Shown: positions 521-32,279 of the stretch, piece by piece
How the letters are laid out: each line of letters opens with the position of its first letter
Numbering within the stretch: the first letter of the stretch is position 1
DNA from: Octopus bimaculoides
Lineage: Eukaryota
Length of the DNA: 32,279 bases
NCBI RefSeq assembly: GCF_001194135.2
Contig: NC_068987.1
Span: forward strand, 42,814,560-42,846,838
Direction: 5' to 3'
Translations under genes and position numbers: made by a program
Notes under the pieces: model-generated
Databases searched by the model: none
What the model saw: the letters and a program-made list of their open reading frames with translations, nothing else
Told to the model about the DNA's origin: nothing

Positions 521-2730
521 GTGAGAGAAAATCATGATGTCACTGGAGAGAAATGTGTCCACATGGATGATGGTTCACTTGCATTTAATGTTTCTGCAAA
601 GCAAGAGGCTTAGAAACACCATTATGAAAGGCTGCTAAATGTAGAGAATGAATGGGAGAAGGAGAGCTTGCCAAATGTTGACCCAACTGAGGGACCAGCT
701 ATCCGAATTGATAGTGGCTTAGTAAATAAAGCAGTTAAGGACATGAAGACAAGGAAAGCACAGGCCCATCAGGAATCACTGCAGAGATGCTTAAAATATC
801 TGGCAGTGTAGGTTATGGTTTAGTCACCCGTATTGTTAACCAAGTGGTACACGAAGGAGTCATACCCAATGGCTGGTGTAGCAGTACCATAGTCAACTGC
901 TACAAAGGTAAAGGTGATGTGTTAGATAGAAATAATTACAGAGCTATCAAATTGTTTGATCAGGTGATGAAAGTCATGGAGAGGGTCATAGCCCAACAAA
1001 TTAGGAAGTGAGTTAGTGTAGATGAGATGCAGTTTGGTTTTGTGCCAGGAAGAAGCACAATTGATGCTATATTTCTGGTAAGGCAGCTGCAGGAGAAATA
1101 CATAGTCAAAGATAAACCTCTGTACCTGGCTTTTGTTGACACGGAGAAAGCCTTTGACAGGGTCCCCCGATCCCTTATCTGGTGGGCAGTGTGGAAACTA
1201 GGGATAGACAAGTGATTGGTGAGAGCTGTAGAGGGATGTTGTCAGTGAGGTGAGTATAGTGAAGAATTCACAGTACAAATAGGGGTTCACCAAGGATCAG
1301 TCCTCAGCCTCCTCTTGTTCATCATAGTCCTCCAGGCAATAACAGAGGAATTTAAGACAGGCTGCCCCTGGGAGCTCCTCTATGCTAATGACCTTGTTCT
1401 TATAGCTGAATCACTACCAGAGCTAGAAGAAGTTTCAAATGTGGAAGCAAGGTTTAGAATTAAAGGGCCTTAGAGTTAACCTAGCAAAAACCAAAGTCTT
1501 AGTAAGTAGGAAAGCAGACAAATCACAACCCCACTCAGGTAGATGGCCCTGCTTGATCTATAGGAAAGGCATAGGTAGAAATTCCATAAGATGCATCTGG
1601 TGTAAACTATAGAGTATAAAAAGTGCAGTAATATCAGAGGAAGGTTAACAGGAAAAATAGTTTTTATGTGTGGAAGGTGCATCGGTATGATTAACACTAA
1701 AAATGTACAGAAAATAGACTCCATCAAATGCCAGAGGGAAAAACTAAAAGTAGTTGATAGCTTCTGTTACCTGGGTGATCAAGTGAGTAGCGGGGATTGG
1801 ATGCTCTGGAAGCATAGCTGCTAGAATAAGAATAAGTTGAGAAAAGTTCAAAGAGCTTCTACTTCTGTTGGTAACGAAGAGCCTCTCCCTCAGAGTGAAA
1901 GGCAGATTGTATGATGCCTGTGTGCAAATAGCCATGCTAAACAGCAGTGAAACATGGCCTGTGACTGCTGTGGACATGCGTAGGCTTCAAAAAAACGAAG
2001 CTAGTGTGCTTTGCTGGATGTGCAATGTCAGTGTGCATGCATGATAGAGTGTAAACATCTTGAGAGAAAAGTTGGGCATAAAAGGCATAAGATGTGGTGT
2101 GCAAGAGAGATGACTGCATTGGTATGGTCAGGTGATGCATATGAATGTGGACAGCTGTAAGAAGCAGTACCAGTGGAAGGAAGCTGTGGAAGAGGGAGAC
2201 CCAGGAAGACATGGGATGAGGTAGTGAATCATGATCTTCAAACACTGGGCCTCATGGAGGCAATGACTAGCGCCCAAGACATTTGGCGACATGTTGTACT
2301 TGTAAAAATCCATCAAGCCAAGTGAAATCATAGTTGTGGCCATTGTTGGTGTCAGGTAACTAGCACTCCTGCTGGTGGCATGTAAAAAGCACCTTTTGAG
2401 TATTGGGACTCATGGAGGCAATGATAAATGATTGAGACCTTTGACAATATGCTGTACTTGAGAAGGAAGATCCATTAAACTGAGTGAAATCATAGTTGTG
2501 GCAGATACTGGTGTCACACAACTGACACTCATGCCGGTGGCATGTAAAAGCACCCATTACACTTGGAGTGCAATGGGTGTTAAAAAGGGCATCCAACTGT
2601 AGAAACCATGCCAGATCAGACCAGAATCTGGTTTGGCCCCTCAGCCTATTAGCCCTGGTCAAATCATCCAATCCATGCCAGCATGGACAGCGAACATTAA
2701 ATTATGATGATGATGATGATGATGATGTAT
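521..2730 (+). mobile_element. Decayed, 5'-truncated RTE-clade LINE: reverse transcriptase, C-terminal region and 3' UTR ending in a (GAT)n tail
   Basis: Broken ORF2 reads ENHDVTGEKCV...HYERLLNVENEW...MLKISG...NCYKGKGDVLDRNNYRAIKL...MQFGFVPGRSTIDAIFLVRQLQEKY...AFVDTEKAFDRVPR...GVHQGSVLS...LLYANDL (YADD mutated). Several in-frame stops and deletions; TGA(n) tail near 2703-2727. Confidence 0.93.
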
Positions 2731-7965: not shown

Positions 7966-8082
7966 CAAGTTCAGATTCACAGTGATTCTGTGATCACCAT
8001 AGCTCCACAGGAAACATCCAAAAGTTCAATGTATTATGTAATGCAGCAACTGAAGAAAGAAATACCTGAAGTGATGATAAAA
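7966..8082 (+). CDS. POLR3A: RNA polymerase III largest subunit, internal exon ([39 protein letters not shown])
   Basis: tttccag acceptor, aaa|gtaagt donor, 117 nt, phase 0/0; resembles RPC1 ...[28 protein letters not shown] as I recall it. The upstream exon lies outside the window. Confidence 0.93.
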
Positions 8083-9418: not shown

Positions 9419-9527
9419 GGAATTCCTTCAGTGACCCGGGCTGTTATTCATCAAGATGAAAAGAAAGCAAATCATTATAAACTCCTAGTTGAAGGTGACA
9501 ATTTGAGAGCTGTCATGGCTACACGAG
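9419..9527 (+). CDS. POLR3A: POLR3A exon ([37 protein letters not shown])
   Basis: tgttgcag acceptor, g|gtaaac donor, 109 nt, phase 0/1; conserved [15 protein letters not shown] motif. Confidence 0.96.
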
Positions 9528-13053: not shown

Positions 13054-13226
13054 GTGTCAATGGAAGCTTATCAACTTCCAACAATACATGTGAAGTAGAA
13101 AAGACTTTAGGTATTGAGGCTGCTCGCACTACAATAATTGAAGAGATTGTCTACACCATGGTCAACCATGGCATGAGTATTGATATCCGACATGTGATGC
13201 TTCTTGCTGACCTGATGACTTGCAGA
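13054..13226 (+). CDS. POLR3A: POLR3A exon ([58 protein letters not shown])
   Basis: cgtag acceptor, aga|gtaagt donor, 173 nt, phase 1/0; LGIEAAR and [11 protein letters not shown] are hallmark motifs of RNA polymerase largest subunits. Confidence 0.98.
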
Positions 13227-15043: not shown

Positions 15044-15112
15044 GGTGAAGTACTTGGTATCACAAGATTTGGATTAAGCAAGATGAAAGAAAGTGTCCTA
15101 ATGCTTGCTTCT
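15044..15112 (+). CDS. POLR3A: POLR3A exon (GEVLGITRFGLSKMKESVLMLAS)
   Basis: ctaactag acceptor, tct|gtaagt donor, 69 nt, phase 0/0; near-invariant region H sequence. Confidence 0.98.
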
Positions 15113-16435: not shown

Positions 16436-16499
16436 TTTGAAAAAACTGCTGATCATCTATTTGAAGCAGCTTTCCATGGACAAAAAGATGCCATCACAG
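16436..16499 (+). CDS. POLR3A: POLR3A exon (FEKTADHLFEAAFHGQKDAIT-G)
   Basis: ttctag acceptor, g|gttagt donor, 64 nt, phase 0/1; FEKTADHLF is typical of RPC1. Confidence 0.98.
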
Positions 16500-16694: not shown

Positions 16695-17620
16695 TTCTAC
16701 TCTAAGCACAAGGCCCAACATTTTGGGGGAGGGGGTCAGTTGATTAGATTGACTCCAGTATGCAACTGGTACTTAATTTATCGATCCCGAAAGGATGAAA
16801 GGCAATTTGAATTCAGAACATAAAGATAAGCAAAACGCTGCTAAGCATTTCGCAGAAACACCAATAATCTTGGTCCTTTGACAGCTCCACTGTGTGGCTC
16901 ATTCCCATATCTTCCTGGATTTTCCTCTTCCTTAAGTTATATATAAGTCAAAAGTCTATAATTCATAAGTATGCCAGGCAAAATGCTTAATGGCATTTTG
17001 CCCATCTTAACATTCTGAGTTCAAATTCTGCTGAGGTTGGCTTTGCTTTTCAACTTTTCAGGGTCGATAAATGAAGTACCAGTGAAACATTGGAGTTGAT
17101 TGACATGATTGACTAGTCCCCTCCCCCAAAATTTCAGGCCTTGTGCCTTCAGTAGAAAGGATTATTATTATCATTAATAATAATAATGTGGTGAGCTGGC
17201 AGAATTGTTAGCACACTGGGAAAAATGCTTAGTGACATGTTTATGTTCTGTATTCAAATTCCACCAAGGTTGACTGTCTTTGCCTTTCATCCTTCTAGGG
17301 TTGATAAAATAAGTACTAACTGAGAACTAGGGTTGATATAATTAATTTACCCCCTCCTCTGCAGTTACTGGCCTTGTACCAAAAATTTGAAACTATTATT
17401 ATTTTTTAAATCATTAACTTACTGGGAAAAATGCTTAGTGTTATATTGTCTGTCTTTACCTTCTGAATTCAAATTCCACTGAGGTTGACTTTGCTGTTCA
17501 TCTTTTGTGGGTTGATAAAATAAGTACCAGTGGAGCACTGGGGTCAATGTAATCAGCTAGCCCCTTCCCCAAAATTTCAGGTTTTGTGCCTATGGTAGAA
17601 AGGATTTATTATTATTATTC
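16695..17620. mobile_element. Cluster of four tRNA-SINE copies: one minus (about 16695-16855), three plus (about 16965-17180, 17186-17400, 17420-17620)
   Basis: Each repeats aaaatgcttag...gttcaaatt...gaggttg.ctttgc.tttca.c.tt...gggt.gataaa.taagtac; (att)n tails between plus copies. Confidence 0.85.
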
Positions 17621-19176: not shown

Positions 19177-20918
19177 TTTTCAACCTGCACATTAAATAAG
19201 CCTTCAAGCAGTCTTTCCACATGCCAGAAATAACAGCCAAATCTCCGAGAAACTCTTTTTGGCACACACCTACATACTTTGTAGGCATTCCTACACAAGA
19301 GTGCCCCCTCGACTTCTTTTCCTTGCATCTTTCAGAAAAATGGATATTTTTAAATAAAATTTCCTAAATATATGCTTCATATGGTGAAGATTCTGATTAT
19401 ATTGAAATTGAAATTCTGAAATGGCAATCTTTTTTAGAGACTTGGAGTCTCTGTAGCCAAAAACATAGGTTTTTGCAGAAGAAAAAGAAAATCAAAAGGT
19501 GTGTGGTGATTGTCCGCCTTGTCCACCTTTTTTTCTTATGTTGTATATAGCTGTAAGGCTTCATGCTATTATATATGTATAATATTTTGTCTGTTGTATG
19601 TATATAATGTCTTGTTTGTTTCTGTTTTAGTACACATTTACTAGCTTTTTCCCAGTAGCTTGATAAAAAGCACTGGTGCTGCAATATTGAGCAGTATCAA
19701 TTGTAATTGGTGCAAAACTGTTACGATATCTTGCATCGTTGACTGATGAGGAAAACTCAGCTGCAAATATTCTGTGTATTGTGTCTTTGTCTAATTTCGT
19801 CTCTGTTAAGTTTTCATCTAGTTTCCCGTTTGCTCTGCTTTTGTTTAACTTCTCCTTGTTGTAGTCTTATCTAGGACCAACATTACTTAGTGTATCTCCT
19901 TTTTCATAAGACTGTTGATGATTTGAGGGTGGTTTGGCCATGATTTCTGACAAGTCAAGCGATCGTATAGAGAATCTCCCATTGTCACTGCTTTGTAGAT
20001 TGCCACAATCTGTTATCCTTTGCTAAATCTATGTTAGGAAGATGACAGCTGATTTACTCCTTTTTATACCAAAGCTGTCTGAGACAGCTCTTGCTTCTAT
20101 GATTACAAACTTTCTGCTTTAAAGTATTCTAAATTATAACTTTCCATTAAAATTTTCCGTTAATTTGTGTTCCAAACAAATAACAATTATTTTACTAAAT
20201 TTTTCCTTATTTTCAAAATTAATTGCAATAAAGGTAGTAAATTTCAACAGGTTAAATATCATTTCAATCATAGAAAGATATTTAATTTGAAGTTTTAGGA
20301 CTTGAAGTAATTATTGCCCACTCACTTCCGCCAAAATTGAAGAGAGGTTTGAAAGGTTTGTTGATTGGTTGTTATATTAAGCAGGTCAAGCAACTAATCT
20401 CTGGCTTGACAATGTTATTTGCTGTTTAGCTTTCAGCTAGTATGAGAGAGTAGACTCATGATAAAAAGCATTCCAGCCATGACCGTCAAAACTTCATTTC
20501 AAGTATCACATACCTTTGACAACACTATCTAATGCGTTCTTTCTTTTTAAGCTAGTACTTTGAATTGAAGGAGATTTGGCTGCTATTTCTAGCTGGTCAA
20601 CAACCATGTAGAGGCTCCCTTGCTGGCTCAATATTCTTGGTAGTGGCAGTGATGGGGATGGTAGTAGTGATGATTGCAGTGGTGGTGATGATAATAGTAG
20701 AAGTGATGATGGTGATGTTTATAGTAGTAGTTGTGCATACTGGGTTGATTGCAGTTAGTCCTTTATTCCTTTATGTTTTTGTTGTTGTATTGACAGCAAG
20801 AGAAGGGTGTTTTTTTAGTAGCACAATATGTCTCTGCATGCAGCTAATGTGTGTTCAGTGTTGTACCTTGCCAAAGATGTCTGTATAATGTATATAATGT
20901 AACTTCTTGTCATTACAG

Positions 20919-20988
20919 GAGTCAGTGAATGTATCATTATGGGAATCCCAATGAGTATTGGAACTGGAATATTTAAACTACTTTACAG
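20919..20988 (+). CDS. POLR3A: POLR3A penultimate coding exon ([24 protein letters not shown])
   Basis: cattacag acceptor (phase 1); [16 protein letters not shown] motif; ends at tac ag|atatcctttt, a U12-type donor (phase 2). Confidence 0.96.
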
Positions 20989-21389
20989 ATATCCTTTTGA
21001 TTATTTGAATTACATCAATTGGGCATGTCTTTGATTTCACGGTGTGTTTGTTTGTTTGTGTGTGTGTGTCTGTGTGTAAGACAGGGAGTTGGTAGGTAAT
21101 GCATTATATTTTAGAATGTATTTGAAAGAGTGAAAATCTTGGATATAAAAGAATTAGGATGTATATATATATATATACGCACACACACACACATAGATAT
21201 ATAAATGTGAGTGTGTAGAGAGTGACAGACAAACATATAAATAGAAAGACAGATATACATTTCACACTTTGTACGCAATATTTGTATCCTTCTTTCTTAC
21301 ACATGCCCACTTATGCACACACACACACATATATATGTCTTAATTCTTTTATATCCAAGATTTTCCCACCGTTCCACTTATGCACACAT

Positions 21390-21432
<43 letters not shown>

Positions 21433-24352
21433 NNNNNNNNNNNNNNNNNNNNNNNNNNNNNNNNNNNNNNNNNNNNNNNNNNNNNNNNNNNNNNNNNNNN
21501 NNNNNNNNNNNNNNNNNNNNNNNNNNNNNNNNNNNNNNNNNNNNNNNNNNNNNNNNNNNNNNNNNNNNNNNNNNNNNNNNNNNNNNNNNNNNNNNNNNNN
21601 NNNNNNNNNNNNNNNNNNNNNNNNNNNNNNNNNNNNNNNNNNNNNNNNNNNNNNNNNNNNNNNNNNNNNNNNNNNNNNNNNNNNNNNNNNNNNNNNNNNN
21701 NNNNNNNNNNNNNNNNNNNNNNNNNNNNNNNNNNNNNNNNNNNNNNNNNNNNNNNNNNNNNNNNNNNNNNNNNNNNNNNNNNNNNNNNNNNNNNNNNNNN
21801 NNNNNNNNNNNNNNNNNNNNNNNNNNNNNNNNNNNNNNNNNNNNNNNNNNNNNNNNNNNNNNNNNNNNNNNNNNNNNNNNNNNNNNNNNNNNNNNNNNNN
21901 NNNNNNNNNNNNNNNNNNNNNNNNNNNNNNNNNNNNNNNNNNNNNNNNNNNNNNNNNNNNNNNNNNNNNNNNNNNNNNNNNNNNNNNNNNNNNNNNNNNN
22001 NNNNNNNNNNNNNNNNNNNNNNNNNNNNNNNNNNNNNNNNNNNNNNNNNNNNNNNNNNNNNNNNNNNNNNNNNNNNNNNNNNNNNNNNNNNNNNNNNNNN
22101 NNNNNNNNNNNNNNNNNNNNNNNNNNNNNNNNNNNNNNNNNNNNNNNNNNNNNNNNNNNNTAAAACGAAGCTATGGCTTAATCAGCCAAAGGAGTAAATG
22201 TAAACAACTGAATACTTGTCAGTGATTGGTTGAAATTATCGAAATAAGACAATTTTTTACATGAAATAAATTCGAATACAAAAATATTTTTCTGTTCTAT
22301 AACACAAAATAGATAAGTATATGAAGTTTGAAAGTCTTTCGGTACCAAAAACACTACGTAAAACATTAATGAAAAATGTGGCCCCCATTTTAAAAAAGAT
22401 CCAATTTATTTAATAAAATCACCATTGAGTTCAACCACAGCTCCAGACAACTTTGAAATCTGTCTGTCTGTCACCCACCAATGGGAAAAACAACACCATA
22501 ATGCAATTCACTCTTCCAGAAATTTGAAAATGACATGCGTACTGCTTGACACTCACGCTGGGAGCTCCAGTATGAATATTTCAGCATGTTTGGGTGTCAA
22601 TCTGAGGACAGTGTAATCTAAGAACATGTACCAAGAGTGATAAAAGCCAAACATCCAGTCAACACCCTATGTCTGGCAACAGGACTCTGCACCATACCAC
22701 ACAAGCAGGAGAACCCAGTCATGGCTGTCAGACAATTTCTGCGACCACATCAGCCCTAACATCTGGCCAACTAATTTCCCAGACTGCAGCCCCCATGATT
22801 ATTGTTTGGCACAGTTGAACAAGAGTCCAACAAAACTTCTTGTAACACCAAAGATGAACTGAAGGCAAGGATTATGGCAGCATTCACCAACTTAAACAAG
22901 GAGACCGTCCAGAAGAGTTGCAGGAGATTCTGAAGTTATCTGGAGGCCGTAGTTGAAGCCAATGGCCATTTTATTGAATGAATTCATTCTTTAGTATTTC
23001 AAGATATTTTTATGTAATTTTTGTAAATATATCTCTTAAAATGAGATGTCAGTGTTATTTTCATTTTTGTGCAATTTAGATGACAGTTTATTCACCACAC
23101 CCTGTATATATATATATATATATATNNNNNNNNNNNNNNNNNNNNNNNNNNNNNNNNNNNNNNNNNNNNNNNNNNNNNNNNNNNNNNNNNNNNNNNNNNN
23201 NNNNNNNNNNNNNNNNNNNNNNNNNNNNNNNNNNNNNNNNNNNNNNNNNNNNNNNNNNNNNNNNNNNNNNNNNNNNNNNNNNNNNNNNNNNNNNNNNNNN
23301 NNNNNNNNNNNNNNNNNNNNNNNNNNNNNNNNNNNNNNNNNNNNNNNNNNNNNNNNNNNNNNNNNNNNNNNNNNNNNNNNNNNNNNNNNNNNNNNNNNNN
23401 NNNNNNNNNNNNNNNNNNNNNNNNNNNNNNNNNNNNNNNNNNNNNNNNNNNNNNNNNNNNNNNNNNNNNNNNNNNNNNNNNNNNNNNNNNNNNNNNNNNN
23501 NNNNNNNNNNNNNNNNNNNNNNNNNNNNNNNNNNNNNNNNNNNNNNNNNNNNNNNNNNNNNNNNNNNNNNNNGGTCAAAATACAATAATAATAATAATAA
23601 TAATAAAATGAATGTATATATATCAACTATCAATAAATAACAAATGAATTTACTTAAAAATACTTATTTTACCAATAAATAAAAGAAAAACATTTAACAA
23701 TATTACTGAAAATAAATGCAATACTTATCTTATCAAAGAGAACTCTGACTTATCCATTATAATAGTGTGCTGTCACTACTAACAGCTAGAAGCTGTTAGC
23801 TAAATCTGATAATCATTTTCAGCAAAAATAAGTGACTTTGCTATGGGTACATCACAGAATCAGTGACTCTATTCAAACTTACCTCTTTGGCAATTAGTCC
23901 TGTGTTTTGTTCAGTCAATTCATTTGTGAATTCATTCACCATGTTAGGCGACCTCTATAAAATCTCAACCCTGCTTCACCAATCTCTTTGCAACTGTAAA
24001 TGTTACCACCACCCTACAACATACAATCACTGAACTATAAACCATAACAACATTGCAAACAGCGCTGCACATTGCGAGCCACTTCATCAGTAAAGCAAGT
24101 ACTTTGACAAACTGAAGTAAAGAACTGTAGTAACATTGGAAACACATACCTGCACTAAACCCTGTCTAATGACACTGCAAGCATAACACCAACCACACTT
24201 CACCCATTAACTAAATTTCCCTCTAACGATACTGCAGATAAGATACCAACCGTACTCCACTCTTTAATTAAATCCCTCTAATTACATTACAGGCACTCAG
24301 CATAACAAAATGCTGTTTCTAAAAAGTTGTTTTACTCCTTAACTGATTCCAC
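20989..24352 (+). other. POLR3A: U12-type (minor spliceosome) AT-AC intron, last intron of POLR3A
   Basis: 5' splice site ATATCCTTTT (20989-20998); branch site TCCTTAAC (24336-24343) about 10 nt before the terminal AC (24351-24352); no polypyrimidine tract; splicing restores an RPC1-like C-terminus in frame. Confidence 0.93.
22440..23104 (+). mobile_element. Internally deleted maT/mori (DD37D, Bmmar1-like) Tc1/mariner element
   Basis: YVWQQD(22683)SAPYHTSRRTQSWLSDNFCDHISPNIWPTNFPDCSPHD(22797)Y has exactly 37 residues between the last two Asp; ends LEAVVEANGHFIE* (22981); right terminus ...caccacaccctg followed by TA. Left TIR not visible. Confidence 0.85.
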
Positions 24353-24434
24353 AGCCAGCCATCCACCTACCCCTATCAACCGAGCCCTTGTGTTTGATCT
24401 GGAAGAACTACACACCCCAGAGTCACAATTATGA
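24353..24434 (+). CDS. POLR3A: POLR3A terminal coding exon (R-ASHPPTPINRALVFDLEELHTPESQL*)
   Basis: In frame only when joined through the AT-AC intron; aligns without gaps to the human C-terminus as I recall it ([23 protein letters not shown]); TGA at 24432-24434. Confidence 0.9.
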
Positions 24435-24470: not shown

Positions 24471-24476
24471 AATAAA
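24471..24476 (+). terminator. Polyadenylation signal of POLR3A
   Basis: AATAAA 36 nt after the stop, an A-run at 24491 as plausible cleavage point, and a U-rich tract at about 24514-24540. Confidence 0.7.
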
Positions 24477-24924: not shown

Positions 24925-25866
24925 TAGGCACAGGTGTGGCTGTCTGGTAAGAAGTTTGCTTCCCAGCAATATGGTTTTGGGTTCAGTCCCAAAACCATAT
25001 TGGGCAAATGTTTTCTACTGTAGCCCCAGACTGACTGATGCTATGTGAGTGGATTTGGTAAACAGAAACTCTATCTCTTACTCTCTCTCAGCTGTGTGAA
25101 AAAGTGTCACACCCTAGCAGTTGAGGGAACCTGTGGAAGAGGTAGACTCAGGAAGATCTGGGATGAGGTGGTGAAGCATGACCTTCGAACATTGGGCCTT
25201 ACTGAGGCAATGACTAGTGACCAAGACCTTTGGAGATATGCTGTGCTTGAGAAGATGCAACAAGCCAAGTGAGACCATAGCCCGTGGCCTATGCCAGTGG
25301 GTGTAACCAGCCCACTTATGAGTACCCCTCATTCATTGGACAATAAACTTTGCTTGCGAAGACCTAGTGGGGCAAGTGAAATCAAATCAAAATCGCTGAC
25401 GTGGCCTGATTGGCACTCATGTCAGTGGAACGTTAAAAGCACATCCGAGCGTGATCATTGGCAGGGACATAGATTGGCTCCTGTGCCAGTGGCACATAAA
25501 AAGCACCATTCAAACATGATCGTTGCCAGCTTCGCCTTACTGGCACATGTGCTGGTAGCACGTGAGAAACAACATTTGAGATTGGTCGTTGCTAGTGCTG
25601 CTGGGCTGGCACCCGTGCAGGAAACATGTAAAAAACACCTTTTGACCATGGTCATTGCCAGAACCACCTGACTGGCCCTTGTGCTGGTGGCATGTAAAAG
25701 CATCCACTGCACTCTTGGAGTGGTTAGTTTTAGGAAGGGCATCCAGCTGTAGAAACTTTGCCAGCTCAGATTGAGCCTGATGCAGCCTTCTGACTCATCA
25801 GTCCTCAGTCAAACCGTCCAACCCATGCCAGCATGGAAAGTGGACGTTAAACAACAATGATGATGA
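24925..25866 (+). mobile_element. SINE head (about 24925-25075) abutting an RTE 3' end (C-terminal ORF, 3' UTR with internal repeats, tail)
   Basis: Head ggcacaggtgtggctgtctggtaagaag...gggttcagtccc; then VEGTCGRGRLRKIWDEVVKHDLRTLGLTEAMTSDQDLWRYAVLEK*, homologous to 2170-2324. Confidence 0.85.
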
Positions 25867-26115: not shown

Positions 26116-27012
26116 TGAAGTCTGATCAATAAGTATCCGGACTGTTGCCATAGTAACAAAACTAAAGCATGCAGAGTGAAGCTGCATGGTACAGATTGAT
26201 CTTGAACTCTACTGTGCATGCACACTAAGTTTTAACATTCTAGCTCACTTCTGCTGTTTATAGTAGTGCTTGGAAGGAAGGTGTGTAGAGTGTGATCATT
26301 GCATTGGCGATGACAGAGAAAGTTGTCATGGTGATACCTGCTCAGAGGCCTATGCAAGGTTGCAGAAAGTGTATGGAGAGCAGTGTATGAGCCGCACACA
26401 AGTGTATGAATGGTTCAGACATTTCCAAGATGGCCAAAAAAATGTTGATATTGACAAACGTTCTGAGAGACCTGCAACCAGCAGAACTGAAAAAACATTG
26501 CAGATGTGTGTGTGCAGCTATGAGGGAAAATCATCGAATTACCATCTGTGAGTTATTAGAGGATGAGCAAGATTAGTTACAGTTGAGTTCAGTCCTTTAT
26601 CACTGAAGATTTGGGTATGAGACATATGTCTGCCAAGTTTGTGCCAAAACTGCTTTCAGCTGACCAAAAGGATATGGGGTTTTCAGTCACACAAGGTCTC
26701 CTTGATTGTGTCGAGAATGATGAAAACTTTTTGAAAACTTTGCATAGGCCTCTGAGCAGGTATCACCAAGCTTTTGGCAAAATTTGATGCAGATTCTCTG
26801 CTCAACTTTCTCTGTCATGATCAATACAATGATCACACACTACACACGTTCCTTCCAAGCACTGCTGTAAACAGTGGAAGTGAGCTAGAATGGTAAAACT
26901 TAGTGCACATGCACAGCAGAGTTCAAGGTCAATCTGTGCCAAGCAGCTTCACTCTACGTGCTTTAGCTTCGTTACTATGGCAATAGTCCAGATACTTATT
27001 GATCAGACCACG
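26116..27012. mobile_element. Non-autonomous mariner derivative with about 250-276-bp inverted arms
   Basis: Termini ta|tgaagtctgatcaataagtatc ... gatacttattgatcagaccacg; internal transposase N-half (GDTCSEAYARLQKVYGEQCMSRTQVYEWF...DLGMRHMSAKFVPKLLSADQK...ENDENFLK). Confidence 0.92.
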
Positions 27013-30630: not shown

Positions 30631-31039
30631 CATTCACTCTCAAAATCTCATCTCCCTGGAATTTGCTTTTTGTTCATTTTTTCGCCCAACCAATAATTTG
30701 CAAGGGTTCAAACCAAACATAAAGAAAAATACTAACGGTGATTGTCCCCAGCAACTTAAATACTCAAACACTTTATGAGTGTGTGTGCAGGGTGGAGCAG
30801 ATTGAGCTCACCGAGTATATCACTGGTATTTATTTCATTGACATGGAAGAATGAAAAGCAAAATCAAACCCTCAGATTTGGTAGGATTTGAAAAAAAGAA
30901 TGCAGTGGGATATTTAATCAAACATGAATGTGCTCCATTATTCTTCACTGTAAGACTTATATTATTTGGAGTAAATTATTAAGCGTCATTTTATAACTAA
31001 TTTAACCACTTTCTCTTCCAACCCACTTTTTCAGCATTC

Positions 31040-31067
31040 TCAAATCTCATCATCATTATCATCATAC

Positions 31068-31100
<33 letters not shown>

Positions 31101-31285
31101 TCACATTACTACAATCATCATGGTCGTCGTCGTCATCATCACGACCACCATCACTCAAAACCACCATCATCGTAATCATCATTATCACTATCACCATACA
31201 CATAACCACAACAACCCCCACCGCCCGGTCACCACCACTACCATCATCATCATCATCATCAACAACAACAACGCCATTCTAGTAC
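31040..31285. repeat. Compound trinucleotide tract (CAT/CAC/CGT/AAC)
   Basis: Direct reading; a comparable GTA/GTG/ATG tract lies at about 20640-20740, and many (TA)n, (TG)n and (CA)n runs occur throughout. Confidence 0.9.
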
Positions 31286-32279
31286 GATCACCATCATGTC
31301 AACCCATATTTATTTTGTGTTGAGTTGATGAAATTATACAAAAGAAATAGCAACGACATCGAAATTAAAGACTTTCTTTATTTATAACTTCTTTTTAGCA
31401 AGATTGAAAGCTGCTCATTTCAATTGGCAAACTATGACAGAATTTGAAAAACGTCGCCACACATCGTCGTATTCATAGTCGATTGGAAATTTGATTGATT
31501 AACCAGTATAACCGCATTCAGTTTTGAAAAGATATTCATTGCTTTCCTCTGTCGCTGCATCTGTCTAATTTGGCTTTCGTATTCATTCGTTTAATATGCA
31601 ATCATTTCATTCGTTTGTTCCATTGTCATTTCTGATGTATTCATCGATTCAGTCCACCGCCAGTTGTCATACAGTTATAACGTATTCATCAGTACAGCGC
31701 CGTGTGAACTGATAGCACTCAACTAAAGTGGGGTATTTGTATAGAACAAATTAGATGTAGCAAAGATATATTTTGCCATTTATCATAAAATTTAAGCAAT
31801 GGAAAAATGTTACGATTGTTTTAATTTTAAAAAATTTTTGTTGCTCTTCTTATACTTTTGATTGAAAAGTTCACAGAAGCAAGGAAACATATTGTCTACG
31901 TTGAGCAGGGATAGCAAACTTTGTATATCATTGATGCCGTTCGCCGATCCCAGCTCTAAGTAGACTGTTGTATTCCTCTCGGGAGACTCGCAGAGATAAC
32001 ACAACGAGTTGTACAATTTAATTATTACATTTATTATTCAATTACATACAAAGAACGCACTCACCGAAAGTTCGATGTTAATAAACATGAGTCATGTCCG
32101 CCATATATATCAATGACATTTTACTACCCCAGTCATTCAGAATAACAACGAAAACAAGGAACTCAGACGAACCACACTGAAACATGAGACGTCAGACGAA
32201 TAAATCTAACAGTCCCTATAACACCTCCCCACTGAAATTGATGCTACACAAGAAGTATCAACAGCAAAGTCTCTCTTGG

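What the first reader, a model, noticed from the sequence alone, without database searches (positions are those of the whole stretch)
20989..24352. Minor-spliceosome AT-AC intron splits the C-terminus of the Pol III largest subunit
Seen directly: perfect U12 donor ATATCCTTTT right after ...FKLLY-ag, branch TCCTTAAC, AC acceptor about 10 nt later, and an 82-nt exon that continues in frame as RASHPPTPINRALVFDLEELHTP and is followed by AATAAA. As I recall, human POLR3A encodes VSECIIMG through the stop in one exon, so this intron would be either ancestral and lost in vertebrates or a lineage-specific U12 intron; U12 gains are considered rare. GT-AG-only gene predictors would probably give a wrong C-terminus. 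I cannot tell whether it is already catalogued.
Basis: partly seen in the sequence, partly recalled or inferred. Interest (0 to 1): 0.85.

Follow-up and report, generated by a model that had tools for sequence, protein, structure and literature searches.

The report
Ancient minor-spliceosome intron in Pol III gene
The last intron of this animal's RNA polymerase III largest-subunit gene is a genuine AT-AC "minor spliceosome" intron, but it is an old one shared with corals, spiders and insects and lost in vertebrates, so it is a tidy example of a known kind and not a new gain.

Summary
The penultimate coding exon of a POLR3A/RPC1 gene ends at 20988. ATATCCTTT starts at 20989, TCCTTAAC lies at 24336-24343 and AC at 24351-24352. 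Only the AT-AC junction gives ..FKLLYRASHPPTPINRALVFDLEELHTPESQL*, which aligns with the human RPC1 tail. Both assembly gaps lie inside the intron. No reading frame crosses them, so only the intron length (3364 nt, 1175 of them N) is uncertain.

The intron is not lineage-specific. Genomic DNA of an octocoral, a spider and a leafhopper carries a U12-type intron in the same codon and phase. A cockroach shows the donor only. So do 26 animal-like metagenome contigs, 19 with an ATATCCTT donor and 7 with GTATCCTT. A fish, a snake and a moth lack it. A kiwifruit has a U2-type GT-AG intron at the identical position.

It is therefore at least as old as the cnidarian-bilaterian ancestor and was lost in vertebrates. 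Three public gene models in other species read through it into wrong C-termini. No RNA from the source species could be checked, and that species was not identified. I found no paper that describes this intron. Interest is modest: a new member of a known kind.

The parts
9419..9527 (+). POLR3A/RPC1 coding exon ([36 protein letters not shown].), flanked by GT-AG introns
   Evidence: tblastn with orthologue fragments. The joined CDS translates cleanly.
13054..13226 (+). POLR3A coding exon (..[57 protein letters not shown])
15044..15112 (+). POLR3A coding exon ([23 protein letters not shown])
16436..16499 (+). POLR3A coding exon (FEKTADHLFEAAFHGQKDAIT.)
20919..20988 (+). Penultimate coding exon: (G)[22 protein letters not shown] plus the first two bases (AG) of the split Arg codon
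   Evidence: It is preceded by a normal U2-type acceptor, tcattacag.
20989..20997 (+). U12-type AT-AC 5' splice site, ATATCCTTT
   Evidence: Read directly. It is the only + strand copy in the window. The same motif sits at the same codon in orthologues.
20989..24352 (+). Phase-2 AT-AC intron, nominally 3364 nt of which 1175 are N
   Evidence: It is the only junction that keeps the homologous tail in frame.
21433..22160 (.). Assembly gap inside the intron, with (AT)n on its left edge
23126..23572 (.). Assembly gap inside the intron, with (TA)n on its left edge
24336..24343 (+). U12 branch-point motif TCCTTAAC; the presumed branch A (24342) is 10 nt from the intron end
24351..24352 (+). AC 3' terminal dinucleotide of the intron
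24353..24434 (+). Coding part of the last exon: (R)ASHPPTPINRALVFDLEELHTPESQL, stop TGA at 24432-24434
   Evidence: It aligns with human RPC1 1364-1387. A tail-only HMM gives E 2.7e-6 and this is the only hit in the window.
24471..24476 (+). AATAAA poly(A) signal, 36 nt after the stop codon
   Evidence: There is no AATAAA or ATTAAA in the first 444 nt of the intron.

Best explanation
The window holds the 3' part of the gene for the largest subunit of RNA polymerase III (POLR3A/RPC1) of an unidentified animal.

Shown:
- Its last intron (20989-24352) is a U12-type, AT-AC, phase-2 intron. The five introns upstream of it are ordinary GT-AG introns.
- Joining 20988 to 24353 completes an Arg codon and appends a 26-residue tail that is conserved from cnidarians to vertebrates (..R.L[LIV]FD..[ED][FL]H.P).
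- The intron is old. It sits in the same codon and phase, with U12 signals, in an octocoral, a spider, a leafhopper, a cockroach and many unnamed animals. It therefore predates the cnidarian-bilaterian split.
- It is precisely absent in a fish, a snake and a moth. Some animals carry the GT-AG subtype of the same U12 intron.

Inferred:
- The minor spliceosome removes it: U11 pairs with ATATCCTTT, U12 pairs with TCCTTAAC, and U4atac/U6atac-U5 carry out catalysis.
- The junction is used in this species.
- Vertebrates lost it, probably through reverse-transcript-mediated deletion at the 3' end of the gene.
For: - **Signals and frame:**
- **Uniqueness:** the two motifs occur once each on the + strand.
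- **Homology of the last exon:** phmmer against human RPC1 runs through [27 protein letters not shown]. The tail-only HMM gives E 2.7e-6 and has one hit in the window.
- **Orthologous U12 introns in genomic DNA**:
  - Paramuricea clavata L001 1723-2190
  - Stegodyphus mimosarum L004 30601-31733
  - Homalodisca vitripennis L007 6764-9046
  - Diploptera punctata L002, donor only, at 17113
- **Metagenome contigs:** 26 of 26 contigs that match the exon-plus-donor pattern are true orthologues. For 15 of them the branch motif, AC or AG end and last exon were also located.
- **Spliced mRNA in a relative:** mRNA-type contigs of another octocoral run straight through ..LLNK|SNITT...
- **Absence:** Garra rufa, Naja naja and Chilo suppressalis lack the intron.
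- **Read-through is unlikely to be the product:** read-through peptides in other species (KYPFI*, KYPLQHIKILYSFIF*, KYPFIALNF..) share only the residues forced by the donor motif. The window has no poly(A) signal near the read-through stop.
Against: - No RNA from the source species was available, so use of the 20988/24353 junction is inferred.
- Two assembly gaps lie inside the intron. Physical linkage of the last exon to the rest of the gene rests on the scaffold.
- The species was not identified. The best protein match is 74% identical. Presence of minor-spliceosome snRNAs in its genome could therefore not be checked.
- The Diploptera contig ends before the last exon.
Confidence: 0.9

Rival explanations
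1. The U12 intron is a recent gain specific to this lineage.
For: The intron is absent from the vertebrate orthologues examined.
Against: The same codon and phase carry U12-type signals in a cnidarian, a spider, two insects and 26 further animal contigs. Independent gains of such an information-rich intron at one site in all these lineages are not credible.
Confidence: 0.02
2. The intron is mostly retained, and the main protein ends ..[20 protein letters not shown] (stop at 21029-21031). The downstream piece would be unused or only a minor isoform.
For: The read-through frame stays open for 14 codons. From general knowledge, minor introns are often spliced slowly. A retained last intron would escape nonsense-mediated decay.
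Against: The protein would lose a tail conserved from cnidarians to humans. The read-through peptide has no counterpart in other species beyond the Y-P-F/L forced by the donor motif. No AATAAA or ATTAAA occurs in the 444 nt before the first gap, while AATAAA follows the last exon. Spliced mRNA contigs exist for an octocoral relative.
Confidence: 0.05
3. Scaffolding artefact: the segment after the second gap (23573 onward) does not belong here, and the apparent last exon is a stray or pseudogene fragment.
For: Two gaps of estimated length lie between the exons. Continuity cannot be tested with the tools at hand.
Against: The exon is on the right strand and in the right order. It is the only tail-like sequence in the window. 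A consensus U12 branch motif and AC precede it at the exact base that restores the frame. A poly(A) signal follows it. Orthologues have the same layout with introns of 143-2283 nt.
Confidence: 0.03

Closest known systems
U12-type (minor spliceosome) AT-AC introns as a class
   Same: 5' end ATATCCTTT, branch motif TCCTTAAC about 10 nt from the 3' end, no polypyrimidine tract between the branch and the 3' end, AT-AC termini, and a non-zero phase.
   Different: Nothing structural. It is a further instance in a gene that the searchable literature does not discuss as carrying one.
Orthologous last intron of POLR3A in Paramuricea clavata, Stegodyphus mimosarum, Homalodisca vitripennis and Diploptera punctata, and in 26 animal-like metagenome contigs
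   Same: Same codon (24th from the G of GVSE), same phase 2, and U12 donor and branch motifs.
   Different: Length ranges from 143 nt to 2.3 kb; here it is about 3.4 kb with transposon-like filler and gaps. Seven contigs have the GTATCCTT donor of the GT-AG subtype; three of them were confirmed through to the AG end. The split codon is Arg (AG|A) here and Lys (AA|A or AA|G) in all the others.
Last intron of the plant Pol III largest-subunit gene (Actinidia rufa, L006)
   Same: Identical position and phase..GTGILKVRQ AG|..|A GTT GAA.
   Different: It is U2-type: GTATGTAAAT donor, pyrimidine tract and CAG acceptor. The tail it adds (RVEDIPQLNYGLHSIIN) does not resemble the animal tail. The pattern fits either minor-to-major conversion of a very old intron or an independent insertion at an AG|R site.
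Vertebrate POLR3A (Garra rufa, Naja naja; human protein 7a6h_A)
   Same: The protein tail is homologous.
   Different: There is no intron here. GVSECIIMG through the stop is one exon in the fish and the snake. Human POLR3A is missing from the minor-intron gene tables of PMC6865273, which do list BRF1 and POLR3H.

Membership tests
U12-type (minor) intron, AT-AC subtype | 5' splice site matching /ATATCCTT | tested here: met
   ATATCCTTTT at 20989-20998. It is the only + strand copy in the window.
U12-type (minor) intron, AT-AC subtype | Branch-point motif TCCTTAAC close to the 3' end (about 10-15 nt) | tested here: met
   TCCTTAAC at 24336-24343. The presumed branch A is 10 nt from the last intron base. 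Orthologues show 10-13 nt.
U12-type (minor) intron, AT-AC subtype | AC at the 3' end, giving an in-frame product | tested here: met
   AC at 24351-24352. The AG two bases further on shifts the frame and loses the homologous tail.
U12-type (minor) intron, AT-AC subtype | Same intron type kept in orthologues | tested here: met
   Octocoral, spider, leafhopper and cockroach (donor only), plus 26 metagenome contigs.
U12-type (minor) intron, AT-AC subtype | Spliced junction present in mRNA of this species | not testable with these tools
   No protein or transcript of the source species is in the collections. The only indirect support is spliced mRNA contigs of a second octocoral.
U12-type (minor) intron, AT-AC subtype | Removal depends on U11/U12/U4atac/U6atac snRNPs | not testable with these tools
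   This needs an experiment. No snRNA gene is in the window (Rfam scan, 0 hits).
RNA polymerase III largest subunit (POLR3A/RPC1) | Sequence homology to RPC1 and not to RPB1 or RPA1 | tested here: met
   Human RPC1 E 9e-47 and yeast RPC1 7.6e-29, against RPB1 about 1e-9 and RPA190 3e-7. Database hits are named RPC1 and carry PF04998.

The most novel reading that the evidence does not exclude
The intron could couple Pol III output to minor-spliceosome activity. U6atac, the limiting minor-spliceosome snRNA, is itself a Pol III transcript (general knowledge). In most non-vertebrate animals, the mRNA for the Pol III catalytic subunit would then need the minor spliceosome to acquire its conserved C-terminal tail. 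Slow or regulated removal of this last intron would escape nonsense-mediated decay and yield a tail-less RPC1. That would form a feedback loop, one that vertebrates gave up at this gene. [quoted passage not shown]
Probability: 0.1. Interest if true: 0.6.

Novelty: new member of a known kind. Interest (0 to 1): 0.3.

Why it matters
There are three reasons.

1. **Annotation.** Gene finders that allow only GT-AG introns truncate or garble the C-terminus of an essential, highly conserved protein. Three public models in other species (P0008, P0108, P0165) show exactly this error.

2. **Intron evolution.** This is a clean, easily aligned case of a minor intron older than the cnidarian-bilaterian split. 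It shows precise loss in vertebrates and a moth, AT-AC to GT-AG subtype switching among animals, and a U2-type intron at the identical site in a plant. It is therefore a useful marker for studies of loss versus conversion.

3. **Link to the minor spliceosome.** In many animals it places the catalytic subunit of the enzyme that makes U6atac among the minor spliceosome's own substrates. That suggests, but does not show, a regulatory link.

Tried and rejected
- **Alternative junctions.** The AG acceptor at 24353-24354 gives ..LLYSQPSTYPYQPSPCV*, which is out of frame with the homologous tail. No GT lies in the last codons of the exon that could serve a U2-type donor without deleting conserved residues (read).
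- **Read-through product.** Rejected as the main form; see the rival explanations.
- **Same-species protein or transcript.** Two homologue searches with the window's RPC1 C-terminus found nothing above 74% identity. The tool lists only hits up to 1.75 times the query length, so full-length proteins were out of reach.
- **Naming the species through its LINE reverse transcriptase.** This returned only unnamed ENA contigs.
- **Literature.** Searches for POLR3A with U12 or minor intron, and for Pol III largest subunit with U12-type, found nothing relevant. The supplement tables of PMC6865273 lack POLR3A. No supplements are held for PMC11347168.
- **Loci that could not be obtained.** The Cherax model is not on record. 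The Diploptera contig ends before the last exon. The Ixodes persulcatus locus is an intronless copy and is uninformative.
- **A wasted scan.** The first metagenome pattern had the wrong spacing and matched nothing, not even the window. The corrected pattern worked.
- **Other scans.** The Rfam scan of the window gave 0 hits. Pfam gave no hit on the transposase-like pieces inside the intron.

Full report
**1. What is in the window**

The + strand carries the 3' part of a gene for the largest subunit of RNA polymerase III. Orthologue fragments map by tblastn to exons at 9419-9527, 13054-13226, 15044-15112, 16436-16499, 20919-20988 and 24353-24434. A further exon ends at 8082. Joined, these exons give a clean 220-residue reading frame ending ..[50 protein letters not shown].

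phmmer against PDB chains gives human RPC1 at E 9e-47 and yeast RPC1 at 7.6e-29. RPB1 and RPA190 score far weaker. The five introns upstream of the last one all begin GTAAGT, GTAAAC or GTTAGT and end in a pyrimidine tract plus AG. The window is 38% G+C, is full of transposon debris, and has four N gaps.

**2. The observation**

The exon 20919-20988 ends ..CTACTTTACAG and is followed directly by ATATCCTTTT. TCCTTAAC lies at 24336-24343 and AC at 24351-24352, and coding sequence resumes at 24353.

- The 20988/24353 junction completes an Arg codon (AG|A) and yields the tail ASHPPTPINRALVFDLEELHTPESQL, with the stop at 24432-24434.
- The AG two bases downstream gives a frameshift.
- Read-through gives [15 protein letters not shown].
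- AATAAA follows at 24471-24476. No AATAAA or ATTAAA lies in the 444 nt of intron before the first gap.

On the + strand, each of the two U12 motifs occurs once in the 32-kb window, precisely at the two edges of the homology break.

The last exon is not an accident of frame. Human RPC1 aligns through it ([27 protein letters not shown]). An HMM built only from 96 orthologue tails picks out +24306-24431 alone among 1365 six-frame pieces (E 2.7e-6, next best 0.21).

**3. The gaps**

Gaps 21433-22160 and 23126-23572 lie entirely within the intron, so no codon spans them. The donor, branch motif, acceptor and both exons are all in sequenced DNA. Both gaps start at (AT)n microsatellites.

Two things remain unknown: the true intron length, and strictly whether the three sequenced intron pieces are contiguous. 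The three pieces have no copies elsewhere in the window. Order, strand and layout match the orthologues.

**4. Related sequences**

The first clue came from truncated public gene models. An octocoral model ends ..FSLLNKYPFI and a cockroach model ends ..FKLLHKYPLQHIKILYSFIF. These are translations of ATATCCTT read in phase 2. A leafhopper model reads ..KLCQKYPFIALNF.. before rejoining the true tail.

Genomic DNA confirmed a U12-type intron in the same codon. That codon is the 24th from the G of GVSE, with no alignment gaps, and the intron is phase 2.

| Species | Locus and coordinates | Length | Branch motif and 3' end |
|---|---|---|---|
| Paramuricea clavata (octocoral) | L001 1723-2190 | 468 nt | TTCCTTAAC .. 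AC |
| Stegodyphus mimosarum (spider) | L004 30601-31733 | 1133 nt | TTCTTTAAC .. AC |
| Homalodisca vitripennis (leafhopper) | L007 6764-9046 | 2283 nt | CCCTTAAC .. AC |
| Diploptera punctata (cockroach) | L002, donor at 17113 | not known | contig ends first |

A pattern scan of metagenome contigs searched for the exon plus [AG]TATCCTT at the right spacing.

- It found 26 contigs. All 26 translate to ..GVSE.IIMG..GTG.F[KQ]LL[HQ] followed by aa|[AG]TATCCTT.
- 19 contigs have ATATCCTT and 7 have GTATCCTT.
- In 15 contigs the last exon was located with the tail HMM.
- The AT-type introns end in AC, 10-11 nt after TCCTTAAC or TCCTTAAT.
- The GT-type introns end in AG, 12-13 nt after TACTTAAC, TCCTTGAC or TTCCTGAC.
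- All the peptides are animal-like. None that resembled plant or fungal sequences carried the U12 donor.

Two short mRNA-type contigs from another octocoral align exon by exon to the Paramuricea gene. They run straight across the junction (..LLNK|SNITT..), which shows the spliced form at RNA level in a relative.

**5. Where it is missing or different**

In Garra rufa (fish) and Naja naja (snake), GVSECIIMG through the stop is one exon. In the moth Chilo suppressalis, this intron and the one before it are both absent.

In the plant Actinidia rufa there is an intron at exactly the same position and phase, but it is U2-type: AG|GTATGTAAAT .. ttctctttcggcAG|A. Several truncated plant-like models ending ..RQRYE* or ..KQRYTQ* look like read-through of a similar GTA.. 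donor.

**6. Interpretation**

The intron is a genuine minor-spliceosome intron that predates the cnidarian-bilaterian split. Absence from both vertebrates sampled without any change in protein length, and absence together with its neighbour in the moth, both look like precise deletions. The moth case in particular fits reverse-transcript-mediated loss biased toward the 3' end of genes. Larue and Roy discuss that mechanism as the dominant route of minor-intron loss (PMC10639083). The same paper reports that molluscs and arachnids are relatively rich in minor introns and that minor-to-major conversion is assumed to be one-way.

The plant intron at the identical site fits either such a conversion of a still older intron or an independent insertion at an AG|R site. 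I could not decide between these.

**7. Known or new**

Full-text searches found no paper that connects POLR3A or the Pol III largest subunit with a U12 intron. The minor-intron gene tables of PMC6865273 list BRF1 and POLR3H but not POLR3A, as expected if humans lack it.

Some public annotations splice the intron correctly (the spider model P0076 and the octocoral model P0119). Large automated catalogues probably therefore contain it for some species, but I could not query them. I rate it a new member of a known kind.

**8. Limits**

- The source species was not identified.
- No RNA from the species was available.
- Human genomic DNA was not examined.
- The taxa behind the metagenome contigs are inferred only from peptide similarity.
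- One metagenome scan was wasted on a mis-spaced pattern.

Noticed in passing
window 739-2322 (+) and 25039-25269 (+): Decayed non-LTR retrotransposon. Reverse-transcriptase ORF pieces interrupted by stops hit Pfam RVT_1 at E 6.6e-20. Its C-terminal motif (..GRGRPRKTWDEVV.HDL.TLGL.EAMTS.QD.WR..V) recurs as a second copy downstream of the gene.
   Followed up: partly
window 26267-26784 (+): Mariner-type transposase remnant. Pfam HTH_48 (Mos1 HTH) hits at E 3.6e-8 on 26267-26548, followed by further broken ORF pieces.
   Followed up: partly
window 22644-22990 (+), inside the AT-AC intron between the two gaps: Frame-shifted ORF pieces (..QQDSAPYHTSRRTQSWL.. and ..NTKDELKARIMAAFTNLNKETVQKSCRRF) look, from memory, like the C-terminal part of a Tc1/mariner transposase. 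Pfam gave no hit at E<=0.01.
   Followed up: partly
window 21132-21168 and 21329-21365: A 37-nt inverted repeat (92% complementary) in the first sequenced part of the intron, bracketing (CA)n and (TA)n microsatellites. (AT)n runs also abut both intron gaps (21400-21432, 23105-23125).
   Followed up: no
window 31006-31320 (+): Long low-complexity stretch that translates as His/Thr/Ile-rich repeats in all three + frames. A similar one lies at 20612-20760. Probably simple repeats and not coding.
   Followed up: no
P0008 (Paramuricea clavata), P0108 (Diploptera punctata), P0165 (Homalodisca vitripennis); loci L001, L002, L007: Public gene models read through the AT-AC donor and carry false C-termini (..NKYPFI, ..HKYPLQHIKILYSFIF, ..QKYPFIALNFKQ..). 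In Paramuricea, a correctly spliced model (P0119) sits on the same contig.
   Followed up: yes
L020, L028, L032 (also L013, L021, L026, L029): In some unnamed animals the same intron is the GT-AG subtype of U12: GTATCCTT donor, branch motif 12-13 nt before AG. So AT-AC to GT-AG subtype switching has occurred at this site.
   Followed up: partly
L005 10001-10561 (Ixodes persulcatus): The whole last 186 residues of RPC1 are encoded without any intron. This is either a processed retrocopy or wholesale 3' intron loss in this tick. The same protein is also on 60 short contigs.
   Followed up: no
P0226, P0334: Proteins 56-73% identical to this animal LINE reverse transcriptase are deposited as Escherichia coli and Salmonella enterica proteins on contigs of 586 and 1515 nt. 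They are most likely eukaryotic contamination of bacterial assemblies.
   Followed up: no
P0095, P0179 (Taxus chinensis): Both gymnosperm models break down exactly at the codon where the intron sits (..LKIRQ end, and ..IRQRRPHLHRHDEQ..). This could mean a non-canonical intron there. The DNA could not be fetched.
   Followed up: no
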